A DNA stretch of 64,000 bases from IMGVR_UViG_3300032214_000715:1-64000, one strand, 5' to 3'; counted from the first letter of the stretch, positions 672 through 8,651 are shown. Numbers and translations: made by a program. Notes: generated by a model not told the origin, from the letters alone.

Positions 672-701
672 AAAAGGCAAGGCGTGGCTTTGCCTTTTTT
701 T
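672..701 (+). terminator. Rho-independent terminator
   Basis: AAAAGGCAAGGC-GTG-GCTTTGCC followed by T7. Confidence 0.8.
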
Positions 702-1583: not shown

Positions 1584-2098
1584 AGAAAAAGTTTATTGAC
1601 TACTACATGCGAATAGCGGAAGAAACTGCTAAACTAAGCAGTGCGATTAAACTTCAAGTTGGCAGCGTTATTGTTCGTCAGAATCAAATATTGGCCACTG
1701 GATATAATGGCATGCCCGCAGGTTGGGATAACAACTGCGAAGATAAAGTATGGGACAAAGGTGCAGGTGGTTGGCTAAGTCCCGAAGAGATTGAGGAACA
1801 GTATCCTTACGAAGGATGGCACGAAGGCGCAGGCCGCAATGTTCGATACGGATTAAAAACCAAACCAGAGGTGCTTCATTCAGAATCTAACGCTTTGATG
1901 AAGGTAGCACGTAGTACTGAAAGTAGTCAAGGTGCCACTTTATTCTGCACACATGCGCCGTGTTTACAATGTGCCAAGTTAATATATCAGAGCGGTATTA
2001 GCAAACTATACTATCGTGATACGTATCGTGAGTCTGACGGCGTTGAGTTTTTGAAACGGAGCGGCGTAGATGTTGAACAGTACACAAATCAGAGTTAA
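1580..2098 (+). CDS. dCMP deaminase
   Basis: GYNG, HSESNAL and PCLQC zinc-binding motifs. Confidence 0.92.
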   Translation: MKKKFIDYYMRIAEETAKLSSAIKLQVGSVIVRQNQILATGYNGMPAGWDNNCEDKVWDKGAGGWLSPEEIEEQYPYEGWHEGAGRNVRYGLKTKPEVLHSESNALMKVARSTESSQGATLFCTHAPCLQCAKLIYQSGISKLYYRDTYRESDGVEFLKRSGVDVEQYTNQS

Positions 2099-2288
2099 CG
2101 TAAATGTAAAATTTGGTAGTTTAAAATACGTCATGAATTGGTGTCGAGAAAACTGCAGTGGTGATTGGACTATAACAAATTACACACCCGATTTATTTTC
2201 TGGAGATTATAATCTCAACGATGATGTGTATGAGTTTACGTTTGAGAACGAACATGATGTACTAGCGTTTACTTTAAAATGGACATGA
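2070..2288 (+). CDS. Small hypothetical, FxLRW family
   Basis: WCRENC...FTFENEHDVLAFTLKWT. Confidence 0.65.
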   Translation: MLNSTQIRVNVNVKFGSLKYVMNWCRENCSGDWTITNYTPDLFSGDYNLNDDVYEFTFENEHDVLAFTLKWT

Positions 2289-2581
2289 AAACACTAAAAC
2301 TAACAAAAATGGATCGCAGACATAAGGGATACGGCAAATTTAACTATTTTGTTTCTGTTCCCTTTTCACACTCTCCGTTGTTAGCTGATCGTGAAGAGAT
2401 TTTTTGTAATTGGAGAATTTGGTGTTGGAATACCTGGGGTCCTAGTTGTGAGTTAGCGTATCATGATGGATATAAAACGTACAGTAGTAAAAATTGGTGT
2501 TGGGAAACAAGTGAATACGGAATGAGATTATATTTGGCTGACGAACTAGAAGCAAGTGCGTTTTCTCTACAATGGCTATGA
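2285..2581 (+). CDS. Small hypothetical, FxLRW family
   Basis: WCWNTWG...EASAFSLQWL; ATGA overlap. Confidence 0.65.
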   Translation: MKTLKLTKMDRRHKGYGKFNYFVSVPFSHSPLLADREEIFCNWRIWCWNTWGPSCELAYHDGYKTYSSKNWCWETSEYGMRLYLADELEASAFSLQWL

Positions 2582-2826
2582 TTACATACAGCATATCTCC
2601 CATCACCATTAATCAAGCACTTGAATTGATTGCTGTGTTACGAATTGATGGATTTAAACAAAGTGTAGACTGGGACTTTTCTTATATTCACGCAAGTGAA
2701 GAGTTTAGGGTTAGAACACCTCCAAAACTACATATCATGATTTACAATGAAAGCATGGCAATCTATTTCATGTTGAAACATGGCGATCTTCGCCCAACAG
2801 AAGTAAACGAAATTTTGGAAGAATAA
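2578..2826 (+). CDS. Small hypothetical, divergent FxLRW family
   Basis: IYNESMAIYFMLKHG; ATGA overlap. Confidence 0.55.
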   Translation: MITYSISPITINQALELIAVLRIDGFKQSVDWDFSYIHASEEFRVRTPPKLHIMIYNESMAIYFMLKHGDLRPTEVNEILEE

Positions 2827-2866
2827 GTCTTTTACTTTTATCTAAACTCGGAGTATAATTACTATT

Positions 2867-3730
2867 ATGGCACAAAGATCACATTATTGGAGTTGCAGCA
2901 AGTTCGCTGACTGGCTGCGTGGTACAGCAAAACCCGGCGCTCAAACTGGCAAAGGATGGAATGATTGGCACAAGATTGCTAAAAAGTCTCATCCTATTCG
3001 CTATTGGATCGCAGAAGAAGGGTTAGACAAAGTTCAAAACTTTATTTGGTATCCTGTGGATAAACTATATGATGTAAAATACTATATCAACAATCGTTGG
3101 GTGACCAAGACGCATCAACTTACCGCGCATTCACGTGATATCAAACCAGGCGAATGGCGTGATGTTGGCAACCGTTTTCTGCCCTGCTTGATGAATGAAC
3201 TAGTTGACTTCGTTGAGGTAGAAACTGCCTGGAGCAACGTTGCTTGGAGCAAGGAAGCACGACAAAAATACAACGCACCATTCTACTCATGGGGATGGTT
3301 CCGTTGGCGTACATGGCGTTGTCCAGAAGCAGGCATTGAACACCTCAAGTGGGCTATGACTTTGACCAACGAAGATTGGTTAGAAGACGATAAAAAACAC
3401 GAAGCAGTTCTTACTGGACAAGCTCTAGCCGCTAAAGAAATCTTTGAACTTTATACATGGTGGAAAGAAGTTTATCCAACTCGTAAGGATCCACATGATC
3501 TAAGTGGCTGGACTGCGTGGTGTAATCGTCGTCGCGAAAAACTCAAAGAAGAAGACGGCGAAGATTATCGTTGGACTGCTATGTTAAGTGGAGAAGATGA
3601 AACAGAAGAGGAACAAACAGAAACACGCCGCATTCTTGATCTTTGTCGTGAGATTGAAAAGCAACAAGAAGACGAGGATACAGAAATGATGATTAGATTG
3701 ATCAAGGTAAGGAATCATTTATGGACTTGA
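2867..3730 (+). CDS. Trp-rich hypothetical phage protein
   Basis: 287 aa ORF with upstream GGAG. Confidence 0.7.
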   Translation: MAQRSHYWSCSKFADWLRGTAKPGAQTGKGWNDWHKIAKKSHPIRYWIAEEGLDKVQNFIWYPVDKLYDVKYYINNRWVTKTHQLTAHSRDIKPGEWRDVGNRFLPCLMNELVDFVEVETAWSNVAWSKEARQKYNAPFYSWGWFRWRTWRCPEAGIEHLKWAMTLTNEDWLEDDKKHEAVLTGQALAAKEIFELYTWWKEVYPTRKDPHDLSGWTAWCNRRREKLKEEDGEDYRWTAMLSGEDETEEEQTETRRILDLCREIEKQQEDEDTEMMIRLIKVRNHLWT

Positions 3731-4053
3731 ACTATGAAAAACCAGCAGAAGGTATCCTAAAAACCAATGATTGGGGTAACTCAAAAGTATACAAAGTAGT
3801 TTGTCATTGCGGTAGTGACGGTCATGATCATGATGTTTGGGTAGAAGCAGACCGGTATGATGTAACTGTTACTATATACACTAACGTAAAAAGCAATTGG
3901 CGAGTAAATCGGTTCCGTCAAATTTGGGACTTGTTGACTAAAGGTTATTCACAACACAGTGTAGACATTTCTCTAACTCAACAACAGGCGTTTAATTATT
4001 CTCTGACTCTACAGGAAGCAATTAAAGACGTTGAGTCTTTTAGAAAACAATGA
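3721..4053 (+). CDS. Hypothetical protein
   Basis: 110 aa coupled ORF. Confidence 0.6.
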   Translation: MDLNYEKPAEGILKTNDWGNSKVYKVVCHCGSDGHDHDVWVEADRYDVTVTIYTNVKSNWRVNRFRQIWDLLTKGYSQHSVDISLTQQQAFNYSLTLQEAIKDVESFRKQ

Positions 4054-4062
4054 CTCTTCATA

Positions 4063-4284
4063 ATGGTCATCCGATCACCAGAACACGAAGTTATTTTTGG
4101 TAAGAAAAATCATCAGAGACAAATTGACTGGTGTACTGAAAAGTTTGGCAAACGATGGAGTGTAATAGATAATCGTGAAGGGACTTGGACCTGCTTTTGG
4201 GCAGGTGTAGATTCTCCTAGAAACTATCGTTGGTTATTTAAAGACGAAAAAGATTTGGTAATGTTTGTATTGAGGTGGATGTGA
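4063..4284 (+). CDS. Small hypothetical, FxLRW family
   Basis: WCTEKFG...FKDEKDLVMFVLRWM. Confidence 0.7.
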   Translation: MVIRSPEHEVIFGKKNHQRQIDWCTEKFGKRWSVIDNREGTWTCFWAGVDSPRNYRWLFKDEKDLVMFVLRWM

Positions 4285-4472
4285 TTACGATACGATATCC
4301 GGACGAACACGATTTTTTGATTGTGTATAAGTGGTGTCAAGATAACTGCCGCGGCAAATTCTATAGTGGAACAGATTGGGATATTCAACGCTGGCAATCA
4401 GACAACCAAAATCGTATATATCAATTTGATTCTGAAGAGGATGCAGCACTATTTGTATTGAGGTGGTCATGA
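4281..4472 (+). CDS. Small hypothetical, FxLRW family (GTG start)
   Basis: WCQDNC...FDSEEDAALFVLRWS; GTGA overlap. Confidence 0.7.
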   Translation: MITIRYPDEHDFLIVYKWCQDNCRGKFYSGTDWDIQRWQSDNQNRIYQFDSEEDAALFVLRWS

Positions 4473-4678
4473 ATAAATTAGAACGTGATTTGGATGACTT
4501 GATGTGGTTTGAACGTGGCACAGCACCATTTACAAAAGCGTTGACTCCTATGGAGTGGAATGATTTGGAAGACTGGTGTGATTCTAACTTCGGCGTCAAT
4601 AATTGGTTCATCGAAAAGAACAAGATTCATACCAGAAAAGCAGAGCACCTGACACTATTCTTGTTGAGGTGGTCATGA
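4469..4678 (+). CDS. Small hypothetical, FxLRW family
   Basis: WCDSNFG...HLTLFLLRWS. Confidence 0.7.
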   Translation: MNKLERDLDDLMWFERGTAPFTKALTPMEWNDLEDWCDSNFGVNNWFIEKNKIHTRKAEHLTLFLLRWS

Positions 4679-4983
4679 AAGCGAATTTTAGTTTTCTATA
4701 TCCTGGTGATCACCGTGATCCAGACACGGTTGCGGATGCTCATGCTGCGTGGATTGGAAGTCATGGAGAGGTAATATCCCTACCTCCAGAAATTCATCCG
4801 GTAAGAGCACCGGATGTACCTCCCGGATTCGAAAACTACTATCTTGTAGATGTAATTGGTAAAGAGTTTGTATGGTTGAACAAAACATTTCCTAAGGAGC
4901 GTTTCAAGTGGTATTGTTGGTATGAGTCAGTGTTTTTGGTACCACCAGAGATGGCTACATTTTTACGGTTGAAATGGTCATGA
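4675..4983 (+). CDS. Small hypothetical, FxLRW family
   Basis: Ends MATFLRLKWS; ATGA overlaps both sides. Confidence 0.65.
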   Translation: MKANFSFLYPGDHRDPDTVADAHAAWIGSHGEVISLPPEIHPVRAPDVPPGFENYYLVDVIGKEFVWLNKTFPKERFKWYCWYESVFLVPPEMATFLRLKWS

Positions 4984-5168
4984 AACTTAATCTAAAAAAC
5001 TTGCCAGCAATAAAATCTATGGAGATTGTTCAGTATTGTTGGGACAATCAAATTGAACCAAAAAAGTGTATGGATTTTGTATATTGGCGTGGAGACCTCG
5101 ATTTTGAATTTGATATTCCAGATGAACACATAACTTGGATGACATTGAAGGGATACTTCAATGAATAA
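4980..5168 (+). CDS. Small hypothetical, divergent FxLRW family
   Basis: YCWDN...IPDEHITWMTLKG. Confidence 0.55.
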   Translation: MKLNLKNLPAIKSMEIVQYCWDNQIEPKKCMDFVYWRGDLDFEFDIPDEHITWMTLKGYFNE

Positions 5169-5415
5169 GATTACCGTATATTGCGGCAATGGTGGCGACT
5201 ATGAATACGAGCGTGATCGTGTTCGGTGGAATATATGGATTGCTGAACATATTCCTGGATGCGGGAGAGTTGGTTATTATACCACAGAAGGATTTACGAT
5301 AACTCCACATAAAGAAGCCGATAAAGCCATCATTGAATTCGACAATCCACATAATGCTACCTTGTTTGCTCTCAAGGCGCCAGAATATATACATACAGAA
5401 TATGAATATGTTTGA
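5161..5415 (+). CDS. Small hypothetical, divergent FxLRW family
   Basis: IEFDNPHNATLFALK. Confidence 0.6.
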   Translation: MNKITVYCGNGGDYEYERDRVRWNIWIAEHIPGCGRVGYYTTEGFTITPHKEADKAIIEFDNPHNATLFALKAPEYIHTEYEYV

Positions 5416-5800
5416 CTACATCAAAGACAAATGGTTGACTTGGCGTACTGGTCTTAAGAAACAGGATCGAGAATTTAGCAAGTGGGTTGAAGAAACCGTT
5501 GTTCAAAATGCCCCGACGATTGAAAATATGTTTATGAACTTTAAGTTCATACTGCCAGTCTCTACACAGATATTTGATCACAATGAACCATTTGGTTGGG
5601 TGCCTAACGAAGAATTTCGCCAGTATATGTATCCTAATAGAGCAATAGGCGATTGTGCGGTCTATTATTTTGCCCGTGGTTATAGAGATCGTTGGGACGG
5701 TAGGTTTTATAAAGATGATATAAGTTGCGATCAAGACCAAGTGTTTGTAGCGACAAATAATGAACGAGATGCTATAATGATAGCGTTGAGGTGGGTATGA
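5408..5800 (+). CDS. Hypothetical, FxLRW family
   Basis: Ends NERDAIMIALRWV; start could be 5402. Confidence 0.65.
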   Translation: MFDYIKDKWLTWRTGLKKQDREFSKWVEETVVQNAPTIENMFMNFKFILPVSTQIFDHNEPFGWVPNEEFRQYMYPNRAIGDCAVYYFARGYRDRWDGRFYKDDISCDQDQVFVATNNERDAIMIALRWV

Positions 5801-5994
5801 AGTTATATGTAACTGATCCTCCAGTTCGCCGTGCTGCTAACGCATTGTTTGGCTCGGGTGCTATTGTCAATAGTGACACTATTTTTAAGTTTGAACAAGC
5901 CTACAACTGCCGTATAGAACAATTCGGAATACCCCTCAAAGTCTTCTTCAACAGTGAAAAGGACTTTACATTTTTTGTATTGAGGTGGTCATGA
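5797..5994 (+). CDS. Small hypothetical, FxLRW family
   Basis: Ends FNSEKDFTFFVLRWS. Confidence 0.7.
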   Translation: MKLYVTDPPVRRAANALFGSGAIVNSDTIFKFEQAYNCRIEQFGIPLKVFFNSEKDFTFFVLRWS

Positions 5995-6263
5995 TTAACT
6001 ACGATCCATGGGCCTCAACAAATTATAAGGCAAACATTCTAGGTATGTTAGCCGTACCTTCTAAGGTTTATCATGGCCGCAACGAATGCTTCTTCTATGG
6101 CCGAAATGGGCAAGAAATAAAGTATTGGATAAGAAGTATGTTTGGTGATACTGATGATTTAGTGTATGCTAATGGGGATATAGACGGAAGCAATGTTCAT
6201 GCAGATTGCGGAGCATTGATCACAGATGGGCAACTCACTATGACATTATTGAGGTGGTCATGA
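5991..6263 (+). CDS. Small hypothetical, FxLRW family
   Basis: Ends QLTMTLLRWS. Confidence 0.65.
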   Translation: MINYDPWASTNYKANILGMLAVPSKVYHGRNECFFYGRNGQEIKYWIRSMFGDTDDLVYANGDIDGSNVHADCGALITDGQLTMTLLRWS

Positions 6264-6508
6264 CTGTTACATATAAGGCTAACAGCATAGGAATCCAGTG
6301 TCCTGTATTACATAAAGTAGTGTACTACAAGGGTACCGACGGCATACAATCACAGTATTATCATAGTTATAAAGACTGTCTTGTTGATGAATGGTTGAAG
6401 GCAAACTGTAAGCATCCTTATTATCATGGACCAGGATACTTACCAGAAAAGTCAATTCAGTTTGAATGTGACGAAGAGGCCATGTTGTTTGCGTTGAGAT
6501 GGATATGA
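6260..6508 (+). CDS. Small hypothetical, FxLRW family
   Basis: WLKANC...FECDEEAMLFALRWI. Confidence 0.7.
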   Translation: MTVTYKANSIGIQCPVLHKVVYYKGTDGIQSQYYHSYKDCLVDEWLKANCKHPYYHGPGYLPEKSIQFECDEEAMLFALRWI

Positions 6509-6702
6509 AAAAGATTTACGAGTATAATACTAAGAATAGTAATGAAGCGGTGAACATTCTGAGATGGTTACGAACTAATGGCGTTCATGATGTTACTTAC
6601 AAAGTTCGTCAGGCAAATTATCATAAGTTATCAATTGAGTTTTTTGACGATAAGCTAGAACTAGCTTACACCATTCAATATGATTGGACCAAGCGTGAAT
6701 AA
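6505..6702 (+). CDS. Small hypothetical, divergent FxLRW family
   Basis: IEFFDDKLELAYTIQY; ATGA overlap. Confidence 0.55.
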   Translation: MKKIYEYNTKNSNEAVNILRWLRTNGVHDVTYKVRQANYHKLSIEFFDDKLELAYTIQYDWTKRE

Positions 6703-7050: not shown

Positions 7051-7407
7051 TTAATCATCGTGTCTTCTACGCATGTTCATACTGCTTACATCTTTTCTAA
7101 CTGTATGTAGTAACATAATAAAACCAGTAACAGCTAAGAAGAAATTAATCATTGTTTCTCCAATAATCCCAAATCTACTGTAAGAAAAAATAAATTGAGG
7201 CCCTAGTGTCCATTCGCAAGCTATTGACATAGCAACCAAGAAACACGAAACTCCCAAATACCATAGAGGAGTTCTAATCCAAATTGGTATCATTCTAGAA
7301 TGAATGGCTACATACAAGCTACTTACGAACGCTATTAGCAAACATACAAAGTTAATTTTTGTTGCCATTCCCTGTAGTGTAAAAAAGAAAATTATTAGCT
7401 CGCTCAT
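7051..7407 (-). CDS. Multi-pass membrane protein (possible holin partner)
   Basis: 3-4 hydrophobic segments, basic C-tail. Confidence 0.55.
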   Translation of the reverse strand: MSELIIFFFTLQGMATKINFVCLLIAFVSSLYVAIHSRMIPIWIRTPLWYLGVSCFLVAMSIACEWTLGPQFIFSYSRFGIIGETMINFFLAVTGFIMLLHTVRKDVSSMNMRRRHDD

Positions 7408-7775
7408 TTATTTTGCTCCGTTTTGGATTTTCCTTGTCTCAAATCATCAACTGCTGTTTTAAGATCACTGACTACTTCAACTATATCTTTATTTTGTCTG
7501 GCGGCAAAAAAATTAGCAACCATGCCCAATACACTGTAGGAAACGAATCCAATGATAAACCCTGCCATTAATTGTGTTTCCCAGTCAAGCGGCCACTCAA
7601 GTAGATGTAATAGCGGAGTACTAAAAATAAGAGCGCTACCGACGCTAGTTCCTCCACGAGTAAACGCTTCGCCTATTGTTTTTGGTCTAATAAAGGTCAA
7701 TATAACCGATCCGCCAATGAATCCGCCTATCATTGATGCTATTTTTGTTCCGATGTAGCTAGCTGGGTCAGCCAT
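7404..7775 (-). CDS. Holin-like membrane protein
   Basis: 3 TM segments (GGFIGGSVIL, ALIFSTPLL, AGFIIGFVSY) and charged C-terminus; start moved to MADP. Confidence 0.45.
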   Translation of the reverse strand: MADPASYIGTKIASMIGGFIGGSVILTFIRPKTIGEAFTRGGTSVGSALIFSTPLLHLLEWPLDWETQLMAGFIIGFVSYSVLGMVANFFAARQNKDIVEVVSDLKTAVDDLRQGKSKTEQNK

Positions 7776-7892
7776 AATAGTCCTATACTTTAGTATAGTA
7801 TTTAATAGTAGACTTTTATTAATAAAAGCAGCATATATTATAAGCAATATATTGAAAGTTATTGTGATAAATAGTACAGGAGAATGGTCATC

Positions 7893-8651
7893 ATGATAAT
7901 TAGAGACATTACAAATTATGAGCCCGCAATAGGAGACATACTTCAACTAGAGTGCGGTGATACGCTCGTTGAAGCTAGCATCAGTGACATAACTGATGAT
8001 GGTTATGTTGTTGAGATTATGAACGAAGGCGTGTTTGATAAACTTAAACAAAGAGTACAGAATATTGCCGGTGATCTTACACAACGAGTAGAGAAGCATG
8101 CTGGCAATACAGCAATGAAGTCTCTAGGTTATATATTTGGAATAGCAGCCTCACATCCAGACGGCTGGAATGTAGTTACAAAAGCACTAAAAGATGAAGA
8201 CAAATTAAAACTTCAAAGAGCAATTGATCAATTACAAACCGATCCAGAATGGGTTAATAATGAGCAACTTAAAAACGGAATGCGAGACGGAATCAGTGAT
8301 GCTCGTTCAGAGATGTCTAATCTAGACAGCAATATCAAAAACAAATTCTTCAATATTTCAAATTCAATGGAGTTTCTCAATATCAAAGAATCAACAGACG
8401 TAACGGAAGCTGAGTATCAGGGTCGTAAAGTGTCATTGGGCAAACCATTCTTAACACCAGATGGGCCCAAGAAGCGTAGTGTCTATGTTAAGAATCCCAA
8501 GGGCAATATAGTCAAGGTTAACTTTGGTGACAAGAACATGAAGATCAAGAAGAGCAACCCAAATCGTCGCAAGAGTTTTCGTGCCAGACATAATTGCGCG
8601 AATCCTGGGCCAAAGCACAAAGCTAGGTATTGGAGCTGTAAAGCTTGGTAA
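7893..8651 (+). CDS. Late protein with conserved basic C-terminal domain (RRKSFRARHNC...ARYWSC)
   Basis: Late promoter 7867-7873; internal xxE sites; C-terminal domain recalled from T4-like phages. Confidence 0.7.
   Translation: MIIRDITNYEPAIGDILQLECGDTLVEASISDITDDGYVVEIMNEGVFDKLKQRVQNIAGDLTQRVEKHAGNTAMKSLGYIFGIAASHPDGWNVVTKALKDEDKLKLQRAIDQLQTDPEWVNNEQLKNGMRDGISDARSEMSNLDSNIKNKFFNISNSMEFLNIKESTDVTEAEYQGRKVSLGKPFLTPDGPKKRSVYVKNPKGNIVKVNFGDKNMKIKKSNPNRRKSFRARHNCANPGPKHKARYWSCKAW

What the first reader, a model, noticed from the sequence alone, without database searches (positions are those of the whole stretch)
2070..6702. Second, independent coupled array: 14 small ORFs whose conserved LRW tail is a Shine-Dalgarno
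Seen: ORFs end F-x-L-R-W-x-stop, coded by TTG AGG TGG NNA TGA. GAGGTG is a strong SD 5-6 nt before the overlapping ATG of the next gene. Many members share a WC..N and F.FE.E.D..F pattern, but others share little beyond the tail. Inference: the same design as the MNERIKE array evolved with a different anchor, so the conserved LRW may reflect RBS selection and recombination at the junction rather than protein function.
Basis: partly seen in the sequence, partly recalled or inferred. Interest (0 to 1): 0.7.

Follow-up and report, generated by a model that had tools for sequence, protein, structure and literature searches.

The report
Phage paralog array with dual-coding tails
A freshwater jumbo phage carries a row of 14 small related genes whose last four codons finish a conserved protein fold and, through unusual codon choice, also spell the ribosome-binding site of the next gene; the same junctions are where related phages swap whole genes.

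Summary
The array is real. Window 2070-6702 (+) holds 16 tightly packed genes. Fourteen belong to one uncharacterised phage family (no Pfam, PHROG or PDB sequence match; at least 415 clusters in metagenomes; 4 copies in Pseudomonas phage PA5oct). Ten end L-[R/K/Q]-W-x-stop, but only six are TTG AGG TGG. AlphaFold (pLDDT 96) gives a beta-alpha-beta-beta-alpha domain in which F-x-L-R-W ends the last helix. L and W are the best-conserved residues, so the tail is first a protein feature. It survives with CGN codons, in longer tails, in fused two-domain proteins and in terminal genes. On top of that, codon choice is strongly selected. Across 158 homologous Arg tails, 70% are AGG (8% elsewhere in the same genes; 3.6% genome-wide). 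Leu is TTG in 61% (about 24% elsewhere). Both biases collapse when the tail is one or two residues longer. The six GAGGTGG junctions are the strongest predicted SDs in the genome. DNA homology between related phages breaks at these junctions. Protein function remains unknown.

The parts
2070..2288 (+). Family member 1 (72 aa). Tail FTLKWT, coded TTA AAA TGG ACA TGA. ATGA overlap with the next gene; weak SD.
   Evidence: External-only profile E = 8e-17. Duplex energy for the next start -3.0.
2285..2581 (+). Family member 2 (98 aa; alternative in-frame ATG at 2279 inside AAATGG). Tail FSLQWL, coded CTA CAA TGG CTA TGA.
   Evidence: Profile E = 1e-3. The L001 ortholog has LRWL coded TTG AGA TGG.
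2578..2826 (+). Family member 3 (82 aa). Tail is MLKHG plus 13 residues. Last gene before a 40-nt gap.
   Evidence: hhalign gives 94.8% for beta3-alpha2. Orthologs keep this tail (P0005, P0013, P0021, P0022).
2831..2859 (+). Promoter-like site (TTTACT-17-TATAAT) in the only sizeable intergenic gap of the block.
   Evidence: This is a consensus match only.
2867..3730 (+). Unrelated 287-aa Trp-rich, acidic protein that ends NHLWT. Not a family member.
   Evidence: No profile hit. No Pfam or PHROG hit. 79% identical ortholog in L001.
3721..4053 (+). Unrelated 110-aa protein (HCGSDGHDH motif).
   Evidence: hhalign probability 0.3%.
4063..4284 (+). Family member (73 aa). Tail FVLRWM, coded TTG AGG TGG ATG TGA. 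The next gene starts at GTG 4281 (GTGA overlap).
   Evidence: Profile E = 5e-16. Duplex energy -10.1.
4281..4472 (+). Family member (63-65 aa; GTG start at 4281 or 4275). Tail FVLRWS, junction TTGAGGTGGTCATGA. This is the protein that was modelled.
   Evidence: Profile E = 1e-22. AF2 pLDDT 96, beta-alpha-beta-beta-alpha.
4469..4678 (+). Family member (69 aa). Tail FLLRWS, junction TTGAGGTGGTCATGA.
   Evidence: (E = 6e-7).
4675..4983 (+). Divergent member (102 aa) with a 55-residue N-terminal extension. Tail LRLKWS, coded TTG AAA TGG TCA TGA.
   Evidence: Sequence shows only the tail. The AF2 model (pLDDT 89.5) has beta-alpha-beta-beta-alpha at residues 56-101. Most orthologs have LRW.
4980..5168 (+). 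Family member (62 aa) with tail TLKGYFNE. The next start (5161) overlaps it by 8 nt.
   Evidence: hhalign gives 84% over 45 residues. Orthologs keep the tail (P0004, P0010, P0011, P0027).
5161..5415 (+). Family member (84 aa) with tail FALKAPEYIHTEYEYV.
   Evidence: Profile E = 2.5e-7. Many orthologs have the same extended tail.
5402..5800 (+). Family member (132 aa) with an N-terminal extension. Tail IALRWV, coded TTG AGG TGG GTA TGA.
   Evidence: (E = 8e-4). Cassette boundaries against L001 fall at both junctions.
5797..5994 (+). Family member (65 aa). Tail FVLRWS, junction TTGAGGTGGTCATGA.
   Evidence: E = 6e-5. Metagenome contigs match 5783-5996 only, with unlike DNA on both sides.
5991..6263 (+). 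Divergent family member (90 aa). Tail TLLRWS, junction TTGAGGTGGTCATGA.
   Evidence: hhalign gives 94.5% over the whole domain. About 93% DNA identity to L001, ending at both junctions.
6260..6508 (+). Family member (82 aa). Tail FALRWI, coded TTG AGA TGG ATA TGA; weak SD.
   Evidence: E = 2e-13; -3.4.
6505..6702 (+). Last family member (65 aa). Tail TIQYDWTKRE. An 18-nt gap follows, then a gene with its own AAGGAA SD.
   Evidence: Profile E = 2e-3. The L001 ortholog keeps this tail.

Best explanation
The block is a polycistronic run of translationally coupled accessory genes. It encodes a hyper-diverse, phage-specific family of about 60-residue beta-alpha-beta-beta-alpha domains.

**Two overlaid constraints.**
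- The family's C-terminal helix ends in F-x-L-[R/K]-W, one residue before the stop. That is a protein (fold) constraint.
- In arrays the next gene starts at an ATG overlapping the stop (NNATGA). Selection has therefore fixed the rare synonymous codons TTG and AGG, so the DNA coding L-R-W reads GAGGTGG. That is a very strong Shine-Dalgarno site 5 nt upstream of the next start.
- The ribosome that terminates on one cistron, or a newly recruited 30S subunit, is thereby held at the next start.
- The same 9-15-nt junction recurs at every gene border. It gives each gene the properties of a portable cassette, complete with its neighbour's RBS, and it is where homology between related phages breaks. 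This probably happens by recombination in the junction microhomology.

**What is shown.** Family membership, the fold prediction, the codon bias and its dependence on geometry, and breakpoints at junctions.

**What is inferred.** Actual coupling of translation, recombination as the cause of the breakpoints, and the proteins' role. My guess for the role is that these are early host-takeover or anti-defence binders built on a conserved scaffold with variable loops.
For: **The family is real.**
- A profile built only from foreign homologues hits 10 array ORFs at E <= 0.002 among 2007 genome ORFs.
- It matches 415 clusters among 1.8 billion representatives.
- Related phage records carry 2-34 copies, and PA5oct carries 4.

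**The tail is part of the fold.**
- AF2 gives pLDDT 96, with L62-R63-W64 closing helix 54-64.
- A tail-only member has the same beta-alpha-beta-beta-alpha topology.
- Residue conservation: F(-2) 97%, L 94%, W 91%, R 77% plus K 13%.

**Protein-level persistence.**
- CGN-coded LRW and extended tails.
- Eight terminal members.
- Fused two-domain proteins P0038, P0071 and P0072.

**Codon selection.**
- Loci fetched by protein: AGG 25/34 and TTG 29/42.
- Members detected by a body-only profile, with seeded junctions removed: AGG 110/158 against 8% elsewhere in the same genes (p = 7e-81); TTG 119/196.
- Tails of 5-6 residues: AGG 7/17 and TTG 3/20.
- Genome-wide, AGG is 3.6% of Arg codons and TTG is 17.6% of Leu codons.

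**SD strength.** -10.1 kcal/mol at the six junctions, against a genome median of -3.7.

**Cassette breakpoints.**
- Window against L001: about 93% identity that ends at the junctions.
- 32% of homology ends lie within 10 nt of a junction, against 4% for random positions.
- 13.7% of family gene ends are hit, against 5.4% of other gene ends.
- Pieces of freshwater metagenome contigs end at 4285, 4473, 4975, 5783, 5801, 5996, 6249 and 6502.
Against: - Only 6 of 14 members in the window carry the strong SD. The LKW, LQW and AGA junctions have weak or no SD yet are equally tightly overlapped, so the SD is not required for the arrangement.
- Terminal members show AGG in only 3 of 7 cases, which is too few to prove that the bias needs a downstream gene.
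- The host is unknown, so the anti-SD sequence is assumed to be canonical.
- No expression data were found. All runs that hold the sequence are DNA metagenomes.
- Breakpoints at gene borders are also what selection against broken genes would leave. Accessory regions are more variable anyway, so the junction's role as a recombination site is not proven.
- Most loci were fetched with the exact junction as a probe. This was corrected by dropping one seed per locus and by a protein-fetched subset, but some bias may remain.
- Protein function is a guess. Fold matches are generic (Z <= 6.6).
Confidence: 0.7

Rival explanations
1. LRW is conserved for nucleotide-level reasons only (RBS and/or junction recombination). 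The protein would tolerate anything there.
For: - The codon bias is extreme.
- Some members share little detectable sequence beyond the tail.
- The PA5oct homologues, mostly outside arrays, lack Arg.
Against: - L and W are among the most conserved residues of the whole domain and lie in a confidently predicted helix.
- LRW is kept with CGC, CGG or CGA codons, in extended tails, in 8 terminal genes and inside fusion proteins.
- The Arg site is R or K and never G, although GGG is one transition from AGG.
- PA5oct homologues keep L plus an aromatic residue.
- 'Tail-only' members share the fold.
Confidence: 0.08
2. Purely a protein motif. The AGG and TTG preference comes from shared ancestry or gene conversion between paralogues, not from selection for an RBS.
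For: - Paralogues sit side by side.
- Identical 15-nt junctions could be homogenised by conversion.
- A metagenome contig shows a tandem repeat of cassette 5783-5994.
Against: - Paralogues are only about 15-35% identical in protein, so synonymous sites elsewhere are randomised. Yet the bias holds across hundreds of members in unrelated contigs.
- The bias depends on the distance to the next start (tail of 4 against 5-6 residues).
- The favoured letters are exactly those that pair with the anti-SD.
- The final codon is NNA whenever the stop is TGA, whereas Ser is coded AGT or TCG before TAA.
Confidence: 0.07
3. The junction is mainly a recombination linker. Its nucleotide conservation is selected because it lets cassettes be exchanged and duplicated, and the SD activity is incidental.
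For: - Breakpoints sit at junctions in pairwise loci and in four metagenomes.
- There is a 2.6-fold excess over other gene ends.
- Gene order and content differ between the window and L001 while anchor genes stay.
- One metagenome joint links 4269 to 5786 with 9 shared letters (short flank, so weak).
Against: - The conserved letters match the anti-SD rather than an arbitrary word.
- The bias falls when the spacing to the start changes by 3-6 nt, which recombination would not care about.
- Selection for intact genes alone places breakpoints at gene borders.
Confidence: 0.15

Closest known systems
PeSL cassettes (promoter-early stem-loops) that mediate modular shuffling of small ORFs in hyperplastic regions of T4-type phages (PMC2839356, PMC4122927)
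   Same: - Runs of small accessory ORFs of unknown function.
- A short conserved sequence recurs at each gene border, carries an expression signal, and coincides with insertion, deletion and replacement breakpoints between related phages.
   Different: - PeSLs are intergenic promoter-plus-terminator motifs.
- Here there is no intergenic space, promoter or hairpin.
- The repeated word lies inside the coding sequence, encodes the fold's last helix turn, and carries a translational signal rather than a transcriptional one.
- The cassettes here are paralogues of one family.
Translational coupling of unidirectional gene pairs with -4 (ATGA) or -1 overlaps by termination-reinitiation (PMC10666635)
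   Same: Same-strand genes overlap by 4 nt at 10 junctions (9 ATGA, 1 GTGA), with an SD inside the upstream gene's 3' end.
   Different: - Described cases are mostly pairs that encode subunits of one complex.
- Here there is a chain of up to 12 paralogues, with the SD supplied by a family-wide protein motif.
- Coupling itself was not tested here.
Effect of a downstream gene's SD on codon use at the 3' end of the upstream gene (Eyre-Walker 1996, J Mol Evol; cited from my own knowledge, not checked here)
   Same: Synonymous codon choice in the last codons is shaped by the neighbour's ribosome-binding site.
   Different: Here the effect is focused on two codons of a conserved motif, reaches about a 9- to 20-fold enrichment of a rare codon, and is inherited across a whole gene family.
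Hypothetical proteins EST35_0247, EST35_0274 and EST35_0275 of Pseudomonas phage PA5oct
   Same: They match the family profile (best E = 7e-10) with the WC.EN and F.F..E.A..F.L pattern.
   Different: - They are few and scattered copies, not an array.
- Their tails are L-Y-F, L-Q-F and L-I-H, with no Arg and no GAGG.
Generic two-layer alpha/beta domains (KH, ACT, RRM, secretin N/STN domains, viral DUF6614)
   Same: Similar arrangement of a three-stranded sheet with two helices. VIA Z is 5-6.6 and atlas TM is 0.54-0.58.
   Different: - No sequence relation.
- The topology beta-alpha-beta-beta-alpha lacks the KH alpha-alpha unit with its GXXG loop and the fourth strand of RRM and ACT.
- The scores are in the range of chance resemblance.

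Membership tests
LRW-tail small-protein family (unnamed; defined here by profiles A3 and the body-only HMM) | Significant match to a profile built without the window's own sequences | tested here: met
   Ten array ORFs hit at E = 1e-22 to 2e-3 among 2007 genome ORFs. Four more are supported by hhalign or a structure model.
LRW-tail small-protein family | beta-alpha-beta-beta-alpha domain ending in F-x-L-[RK]-W | tested here: met
   AF2 pLDDT 96 for 4275-4472. Residues 56-101 of 4675-4983 have the same element order. These are predictions, not solved structures.
Translationally coupled operon (termination-reinitiation type) | Same-strand genes with -4 or -1 overlap or a very short spacer | tested here: met
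   Nine ATGA and one GTGA overlaps. Three longer overlaps of 8-14 nt. Gaps only at 2826/2867, 4053/4063 and 6702/6721.
Translationally coupled operon (termination-reinitiation type) | Downstream translation depends on upstream translation | not testable with these tools
   No RNA or ribosome-profiling data. Only DNA metagenome runs hold the sequence.
PeSL-type shuffling cassettes of T4-type phages | Intergenic early promoter plus stem-loop terminator flanking each ORF | tested here: not met
   No intergenic space at the junctions. The promoter and terminator scan finds no more sites than shuffled sequence, and none at junctions.
PeSL-type shuffling cassettes of T4-type phages | Indel and replacement breakpoints between related phages coincide with the repeated motif | tested here: met
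KH domain | beta-alpha-alpha-beta-beta-alpha (type I) topology with a GXXG loop between the two helices | tested here: not met
   The model has a single helix between beta1 and beta2 and no GXXG loop. Best Z is 6.6, within the chance range.
Pfam DUF6614 (viral) | Match to PF20319 above the gathering score | tested here: not met
   No Pfam hit for 10 window proteins at E <= 1, nor for 115 family members at E <= 0.01. There is only a TM 0.54 shape resemblance.

The most novel reading that the evidence does not exclude
The junction is a coding-embedded 'universal cassette linker'. One 15-nt word would serve four roles at once:
- it ends the protein fold;
- it supplies the neighbour's strong RBS;
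- it provides the stop/start overlap;
- it provides the microhomology for recombination.

Any member of a hyper-diverse binder family, plausibly anti-defence or host-takeover proteins, could then be plugged in, duplicated or swapped among freshwater jumbo phages and be expressed at once. This would be functionally analogous to integron cassettes or PeSLs, but written inside the genes themselves.
Probability: 0.3. Interest if true: 0.75.

Novelty: new variant of a known kind. Interest (0 to 1): 0.55.

Why it matters
- **A clean natural case of dual coding.** Protein-level and mRNA-level selection on the same four codons can be separated by comparing hundreds of paralogues. It gives a quantitative handle on how strongly an RBS can bend codon use: roughly 9-fold against the same genes and about 20-fold against the genome.
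- **A large unannotated phage family.** It has at least 415 clusters and up to 34 copies per genome, and it occurs in a cultured jumbo phage, PA5oct. It is absent from Pfam and PHROGs, so it is a candidate pool of host-interaction proteins.
- **A possible route of accessory-gene shuffling.** If the junction also drives cassette exchange, accessory genes could move between jumbo phages without any intergenic signals.

Tried and rejected
- **No database matches.** Pfam, PHROGs and PDB sequence searches of window members and of 115 homologues found nothing.
- **No match in GenBank phage records.** Megablast of the region and tblastn with two members found nothing. The profile search did find PA5oct copies.
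- I used an exact-pattern scan instead and corrected for its bias.
- **Fold searches gave only generic resemblances.** PDB, BFVD, AFDB clusters, VIA wide and atlas returned KH, ACT, RRM or secretin-N-like matches, or uncharacterised viral proteins.
- **Spurious hit.** The top profile hit, P0028 (1250 aa, 11 stretches), is a low-complexity repeat.
- **No D(-6)/R salt-bridge co-variation**.
- **Under-powered test.** The crude coupled/uncoupled split for AGG and the comparison with 7 terminal members had too few cases to be decisive.
- **Unrelated genes.** 3721-4053 and 2867-3730 were tested as members and rejected.
- **Literature.** Searches for the motif found nothing.

Full report
**Context.**
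- The window is the first 64 kb of a 239,163-bp single-contig virus record with 39.8% G+C.
- Its large proteins resemble only those of PA5oct-like jumbo phages, and distantly.
- The sequence is held by freshwater, lake and aquatic metagenomes.
- Upstream of the finding lie a metallophosphatase fragment, a MazG-like gene and a dCMP deaminase. The block therefore sits in an accessory and nucleotide-metabolism region.

**The observation.**
- Between 2070 and 6702 there are 16 same-strand genes.
- Ten junctions overlap by 4 nt (nine ATGA, one GTGA at 4281) and three overlap by 8-14 nt. The only gaps are 40 nt (2826/2867, with a promoter-like site), 9 nt (4053/4063) and 18 nt after 6702.
- Ten ORFs end L-[R/K/Q]-W-x-stop. 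In the whole genome (2007 ORFs of at least 40 aa) only one other ORF does.
- Six junctions read TTGAGGTGG. The only other copy of that word in 239 kb is a chance LRW inside a large gene.
- The remaining tails are TTG AGA TGG (6490), AAA TGG (2276, 4970) and CAA TGG (2568).
- Four members have different, longer tails.
- The pattern is real and far beyond chance, but the 'Shine-Dalgarno tail' applies to six of fourteen members.

**One family.**
- The small proteins align on W-C-x-x-N ... F-x-F-x-x-E-x-D-A-x-x-F-x-L-R-W.
- A profile built only from foreign homologues finds ten array ORFs at E between 1e-22 and 2e-3, and nothing significant elsewhere in the genome.
- Profile-profile comparison adds 5991-6263 (94.5%, whole domain), 2578-2826 (94.8%) and 4980-5168 (84%).
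- It rejects 3721-4053. The 287-aa gene 2867-3730 is also unrelated.
- For 4675-4983, which shows only the tail by sequence, a model built from 23 orthologs has the same element order in residues 56-101.

**How widespread the family is.**
- It has no Pfam, PHROG or PDB sequence relative.
- It matches 415 clusters at E <= 1e-3 among 1.8 billion representatives.
- I found 453 ORFs in 1.3 Mb of fetched phage loci.
- Four IMG/VR records of 240-339 kb carry 2-34 copies each. The cultured Pseudomonas phage PA5oct carries four, all annotated as hypothetical.

**Fold.**
- AlphaFold2 on 115 sequences gives pLDDT 96 for the 65-aa member: beta1 4-7, alpha1 14-24, beta2 29-33, beta3 47-51, alpha2 54-64.
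- L62-R63-W64 close the last helix.
- Structure searches return only uncharacterised viral proteins (BFVD; atlas TM 0.72-0.80) and generic KH, ACT, RRM or secretin-N-like two-layer domains at chance-level scores.
- The fold says nothing firm about function.

**Is LRW a protein feature?** Yes, for L and W.
- With a profile that stops before the tail, 297 non-redundant members were collected.
- In these, F(-2) is 97%, L is 94% and W is 91% conserved, which makes them the top positions of the domain. The Arg site is R 77%, K 13%, T 4% and never G.
- 84% of members stop exactly one residue after W.
- The motif is kept in several settings where it cannot serve as an SD:
  - where the codons are CTA CGC TGG, CTA CGG TGG or CTT CGA TGG;
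  - where the tail runs on for 3-12 more residues;
  - in eight members with no downstream ORF within 40 nt;
  - in the middle of fused two-domain proteins (P0038, P0071, P0072).
- In PA5oct, L and an aromatic residue remain but Arg is replaced by Y, Q or I.
- The alternative tails in the window are stable subfamilies with conserved orthologs. Two of them still have overlapping downstream genes, so loss of LRW is not simply a terminal-gene effect.

**Is there RBS selection?** Also yes.
- In loci fetched by protein alone (the genome, L001, L004), tail Arg is AGG 25/34 and AGA 9/34, never CGN. Tail Leu is TTG 29/42. Elsewhere in the same genes AGG is 10% and TTG is 21%.
- In the larger set the members were detected without the tail and one seeded junction was dropped per locus. 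There, Arg is AGG 110/158, AGA 30 and CGN 18, against a background AGG of 8% (binomial p = 7e-81). Leu is TTG 119/196.
- Genome-wide, AGG is 3.6% of Arg codons and TTG is 17.6% of Leu codons.
- When the tail is one or two residues longer, AGG falls to 7/17 and TTG to 3/20 (p = 0.028 and 9e-5). A site that depends on spacing would behave this way.
- The last codon is NNA when the stop is TGA (TCA dominant). Ser is still preferred, as AGT or TCG, before TAA.
- The six junctions pair with a canonical anti-SD at -10.1 kcal/mol, or -14.1 with the extended 16S tail. The median for 179 long genes is -3.7, and only one of them reaches -9.
- The other junctions in the array score -1.5 to -3.4, so a strong SD is frequent but not obligatory.

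**Cassette behaviour.**
- L001 is a syntenic contig with 60-90% identical anchor genes. Between these anchors, members are inserted, missing or moved.
- DNA identity of about 93% inside shared cassettes drops to noise within a few bases of the junction on both sides.
- Among all fetched loci, 32% of homology ends lie within 10 nt of a family junction, against 4% for random positions in the same arrays.
- 13.7% of family gene ends are hit, against 5.4% of other gene ends (odds ratio 2.8, p = 3e-8).
- Contigs from four other freshwater metagenomes match the window in pieces that end at 4285, 4473, 4975, 5783, 5801, 5996, 6249 and 6502.
- One contig repeats cassette 5783-5994 in tandem. One weak joint links junction 4269 to junction 5786 through 9 shared letters.
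- This fits exchange in the junction microhomology. Selection for intact genes and the general variability of accessory regions could give much of the same picture.

**Verdict.**
- The tail is a dual-coding element. A fold-terminal F-x-L-[R/K]-W motif has had its synonymous sites, and probably its preference for Arg over Lys, recruited to form the neighbour's ribosome-binding site in a chain of overlapping cistrons.
- The junction also marks, and may promote, cassette exchange.
- The nearest described systems differ in one respect or another. The PeSL shuffling cassettes of T4-type phages (PMC2839356, PMC4122927) are intergenic and transcriptional. Coupling of gene pairs by a -4 overlap (PMC10666635) has been described mainly for pairs, not for chains of paralogues.
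- The function of the proteins is unknown. A diversified scaffold for host-directed binding is my best guess, without direct evidence.

Noticed in passing
At least 8 ORFs start MNER[IL][KR][EK]L, and most end ...HFGVEE or ...FGVE. A gene with the same KEHFGVEE tail lies in locus L004 (2155-2460), upstream of that locus's LRW array, so the two families travel together.
   Followed up: partly
whole record G000 (239,163 bp): Proteins identical to window proteins (P0004, P0007, P0175) are also recorded on a 341,154-bp contig. Relatives sit on contigs of 333-352 kb. The 239-kb record may therefore be an incomplete genome of a jumbo phage of about 340 kb.
   Followed up: no
window 5783-5996: A contig in run X2 (depth 36) goes from 5994 back to 5783. 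Either this single cassette is duplicated in tandem or two near-identical paralogues lie side by side in another lake population.
   Followed up: no
window 4269 / 5786: A contig in run X8 joins the two TTGAGGTGG junctions and skips 1516 bp, with 9 shared letters at the joint. The flank is only 21 letters, so it may be another paralogue's tail rather than a true deletion.
   Followed up: no
window 2279, 2572, 3721, 4974, 6499: Whenever the codon before TGG ends in A (AAA, CAA, TTA, AGA), an extra in-frame ATG is created 6 nt upstream of the ATGA start, so the downstream protein could begin M-x-M. With AGG TGG the same position is a GTG. Which start is used is unknown.
   Followed up: partly
PA5oct MK797984.1 181548-182187 (L128): Two PA5oct family members (EST35_0274, EST35_0275) lie just downstream of the phage's ClpP protease subunit gene. 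Another (EST35_0247) lies next to a metallophosphoesterase, as in the window's neighbourhood.
   Followed up: no
window 131105-131443 (-) in G000 coordinates: This is the only ORF outside the array that ends L-K-W-x (..YFNLKWA). Its profile E-value is 0.29, so membership is unproven.
   Followed up: partly
window 672-698 (+): A strong terminator-like hairpin (12-bp stem followed by a T run) lies between the 110-aa gene that ends at 655 and the MazG-like gene. A near-consensus promoter-like site lies at 315-343.
   Followed up: no
window 7051-7946 (-): Two opposite-strand ORFs with several hydrophobic stretches (118 and 180 aa) bound the block downstream. They were not analysed.
   Followed up: no
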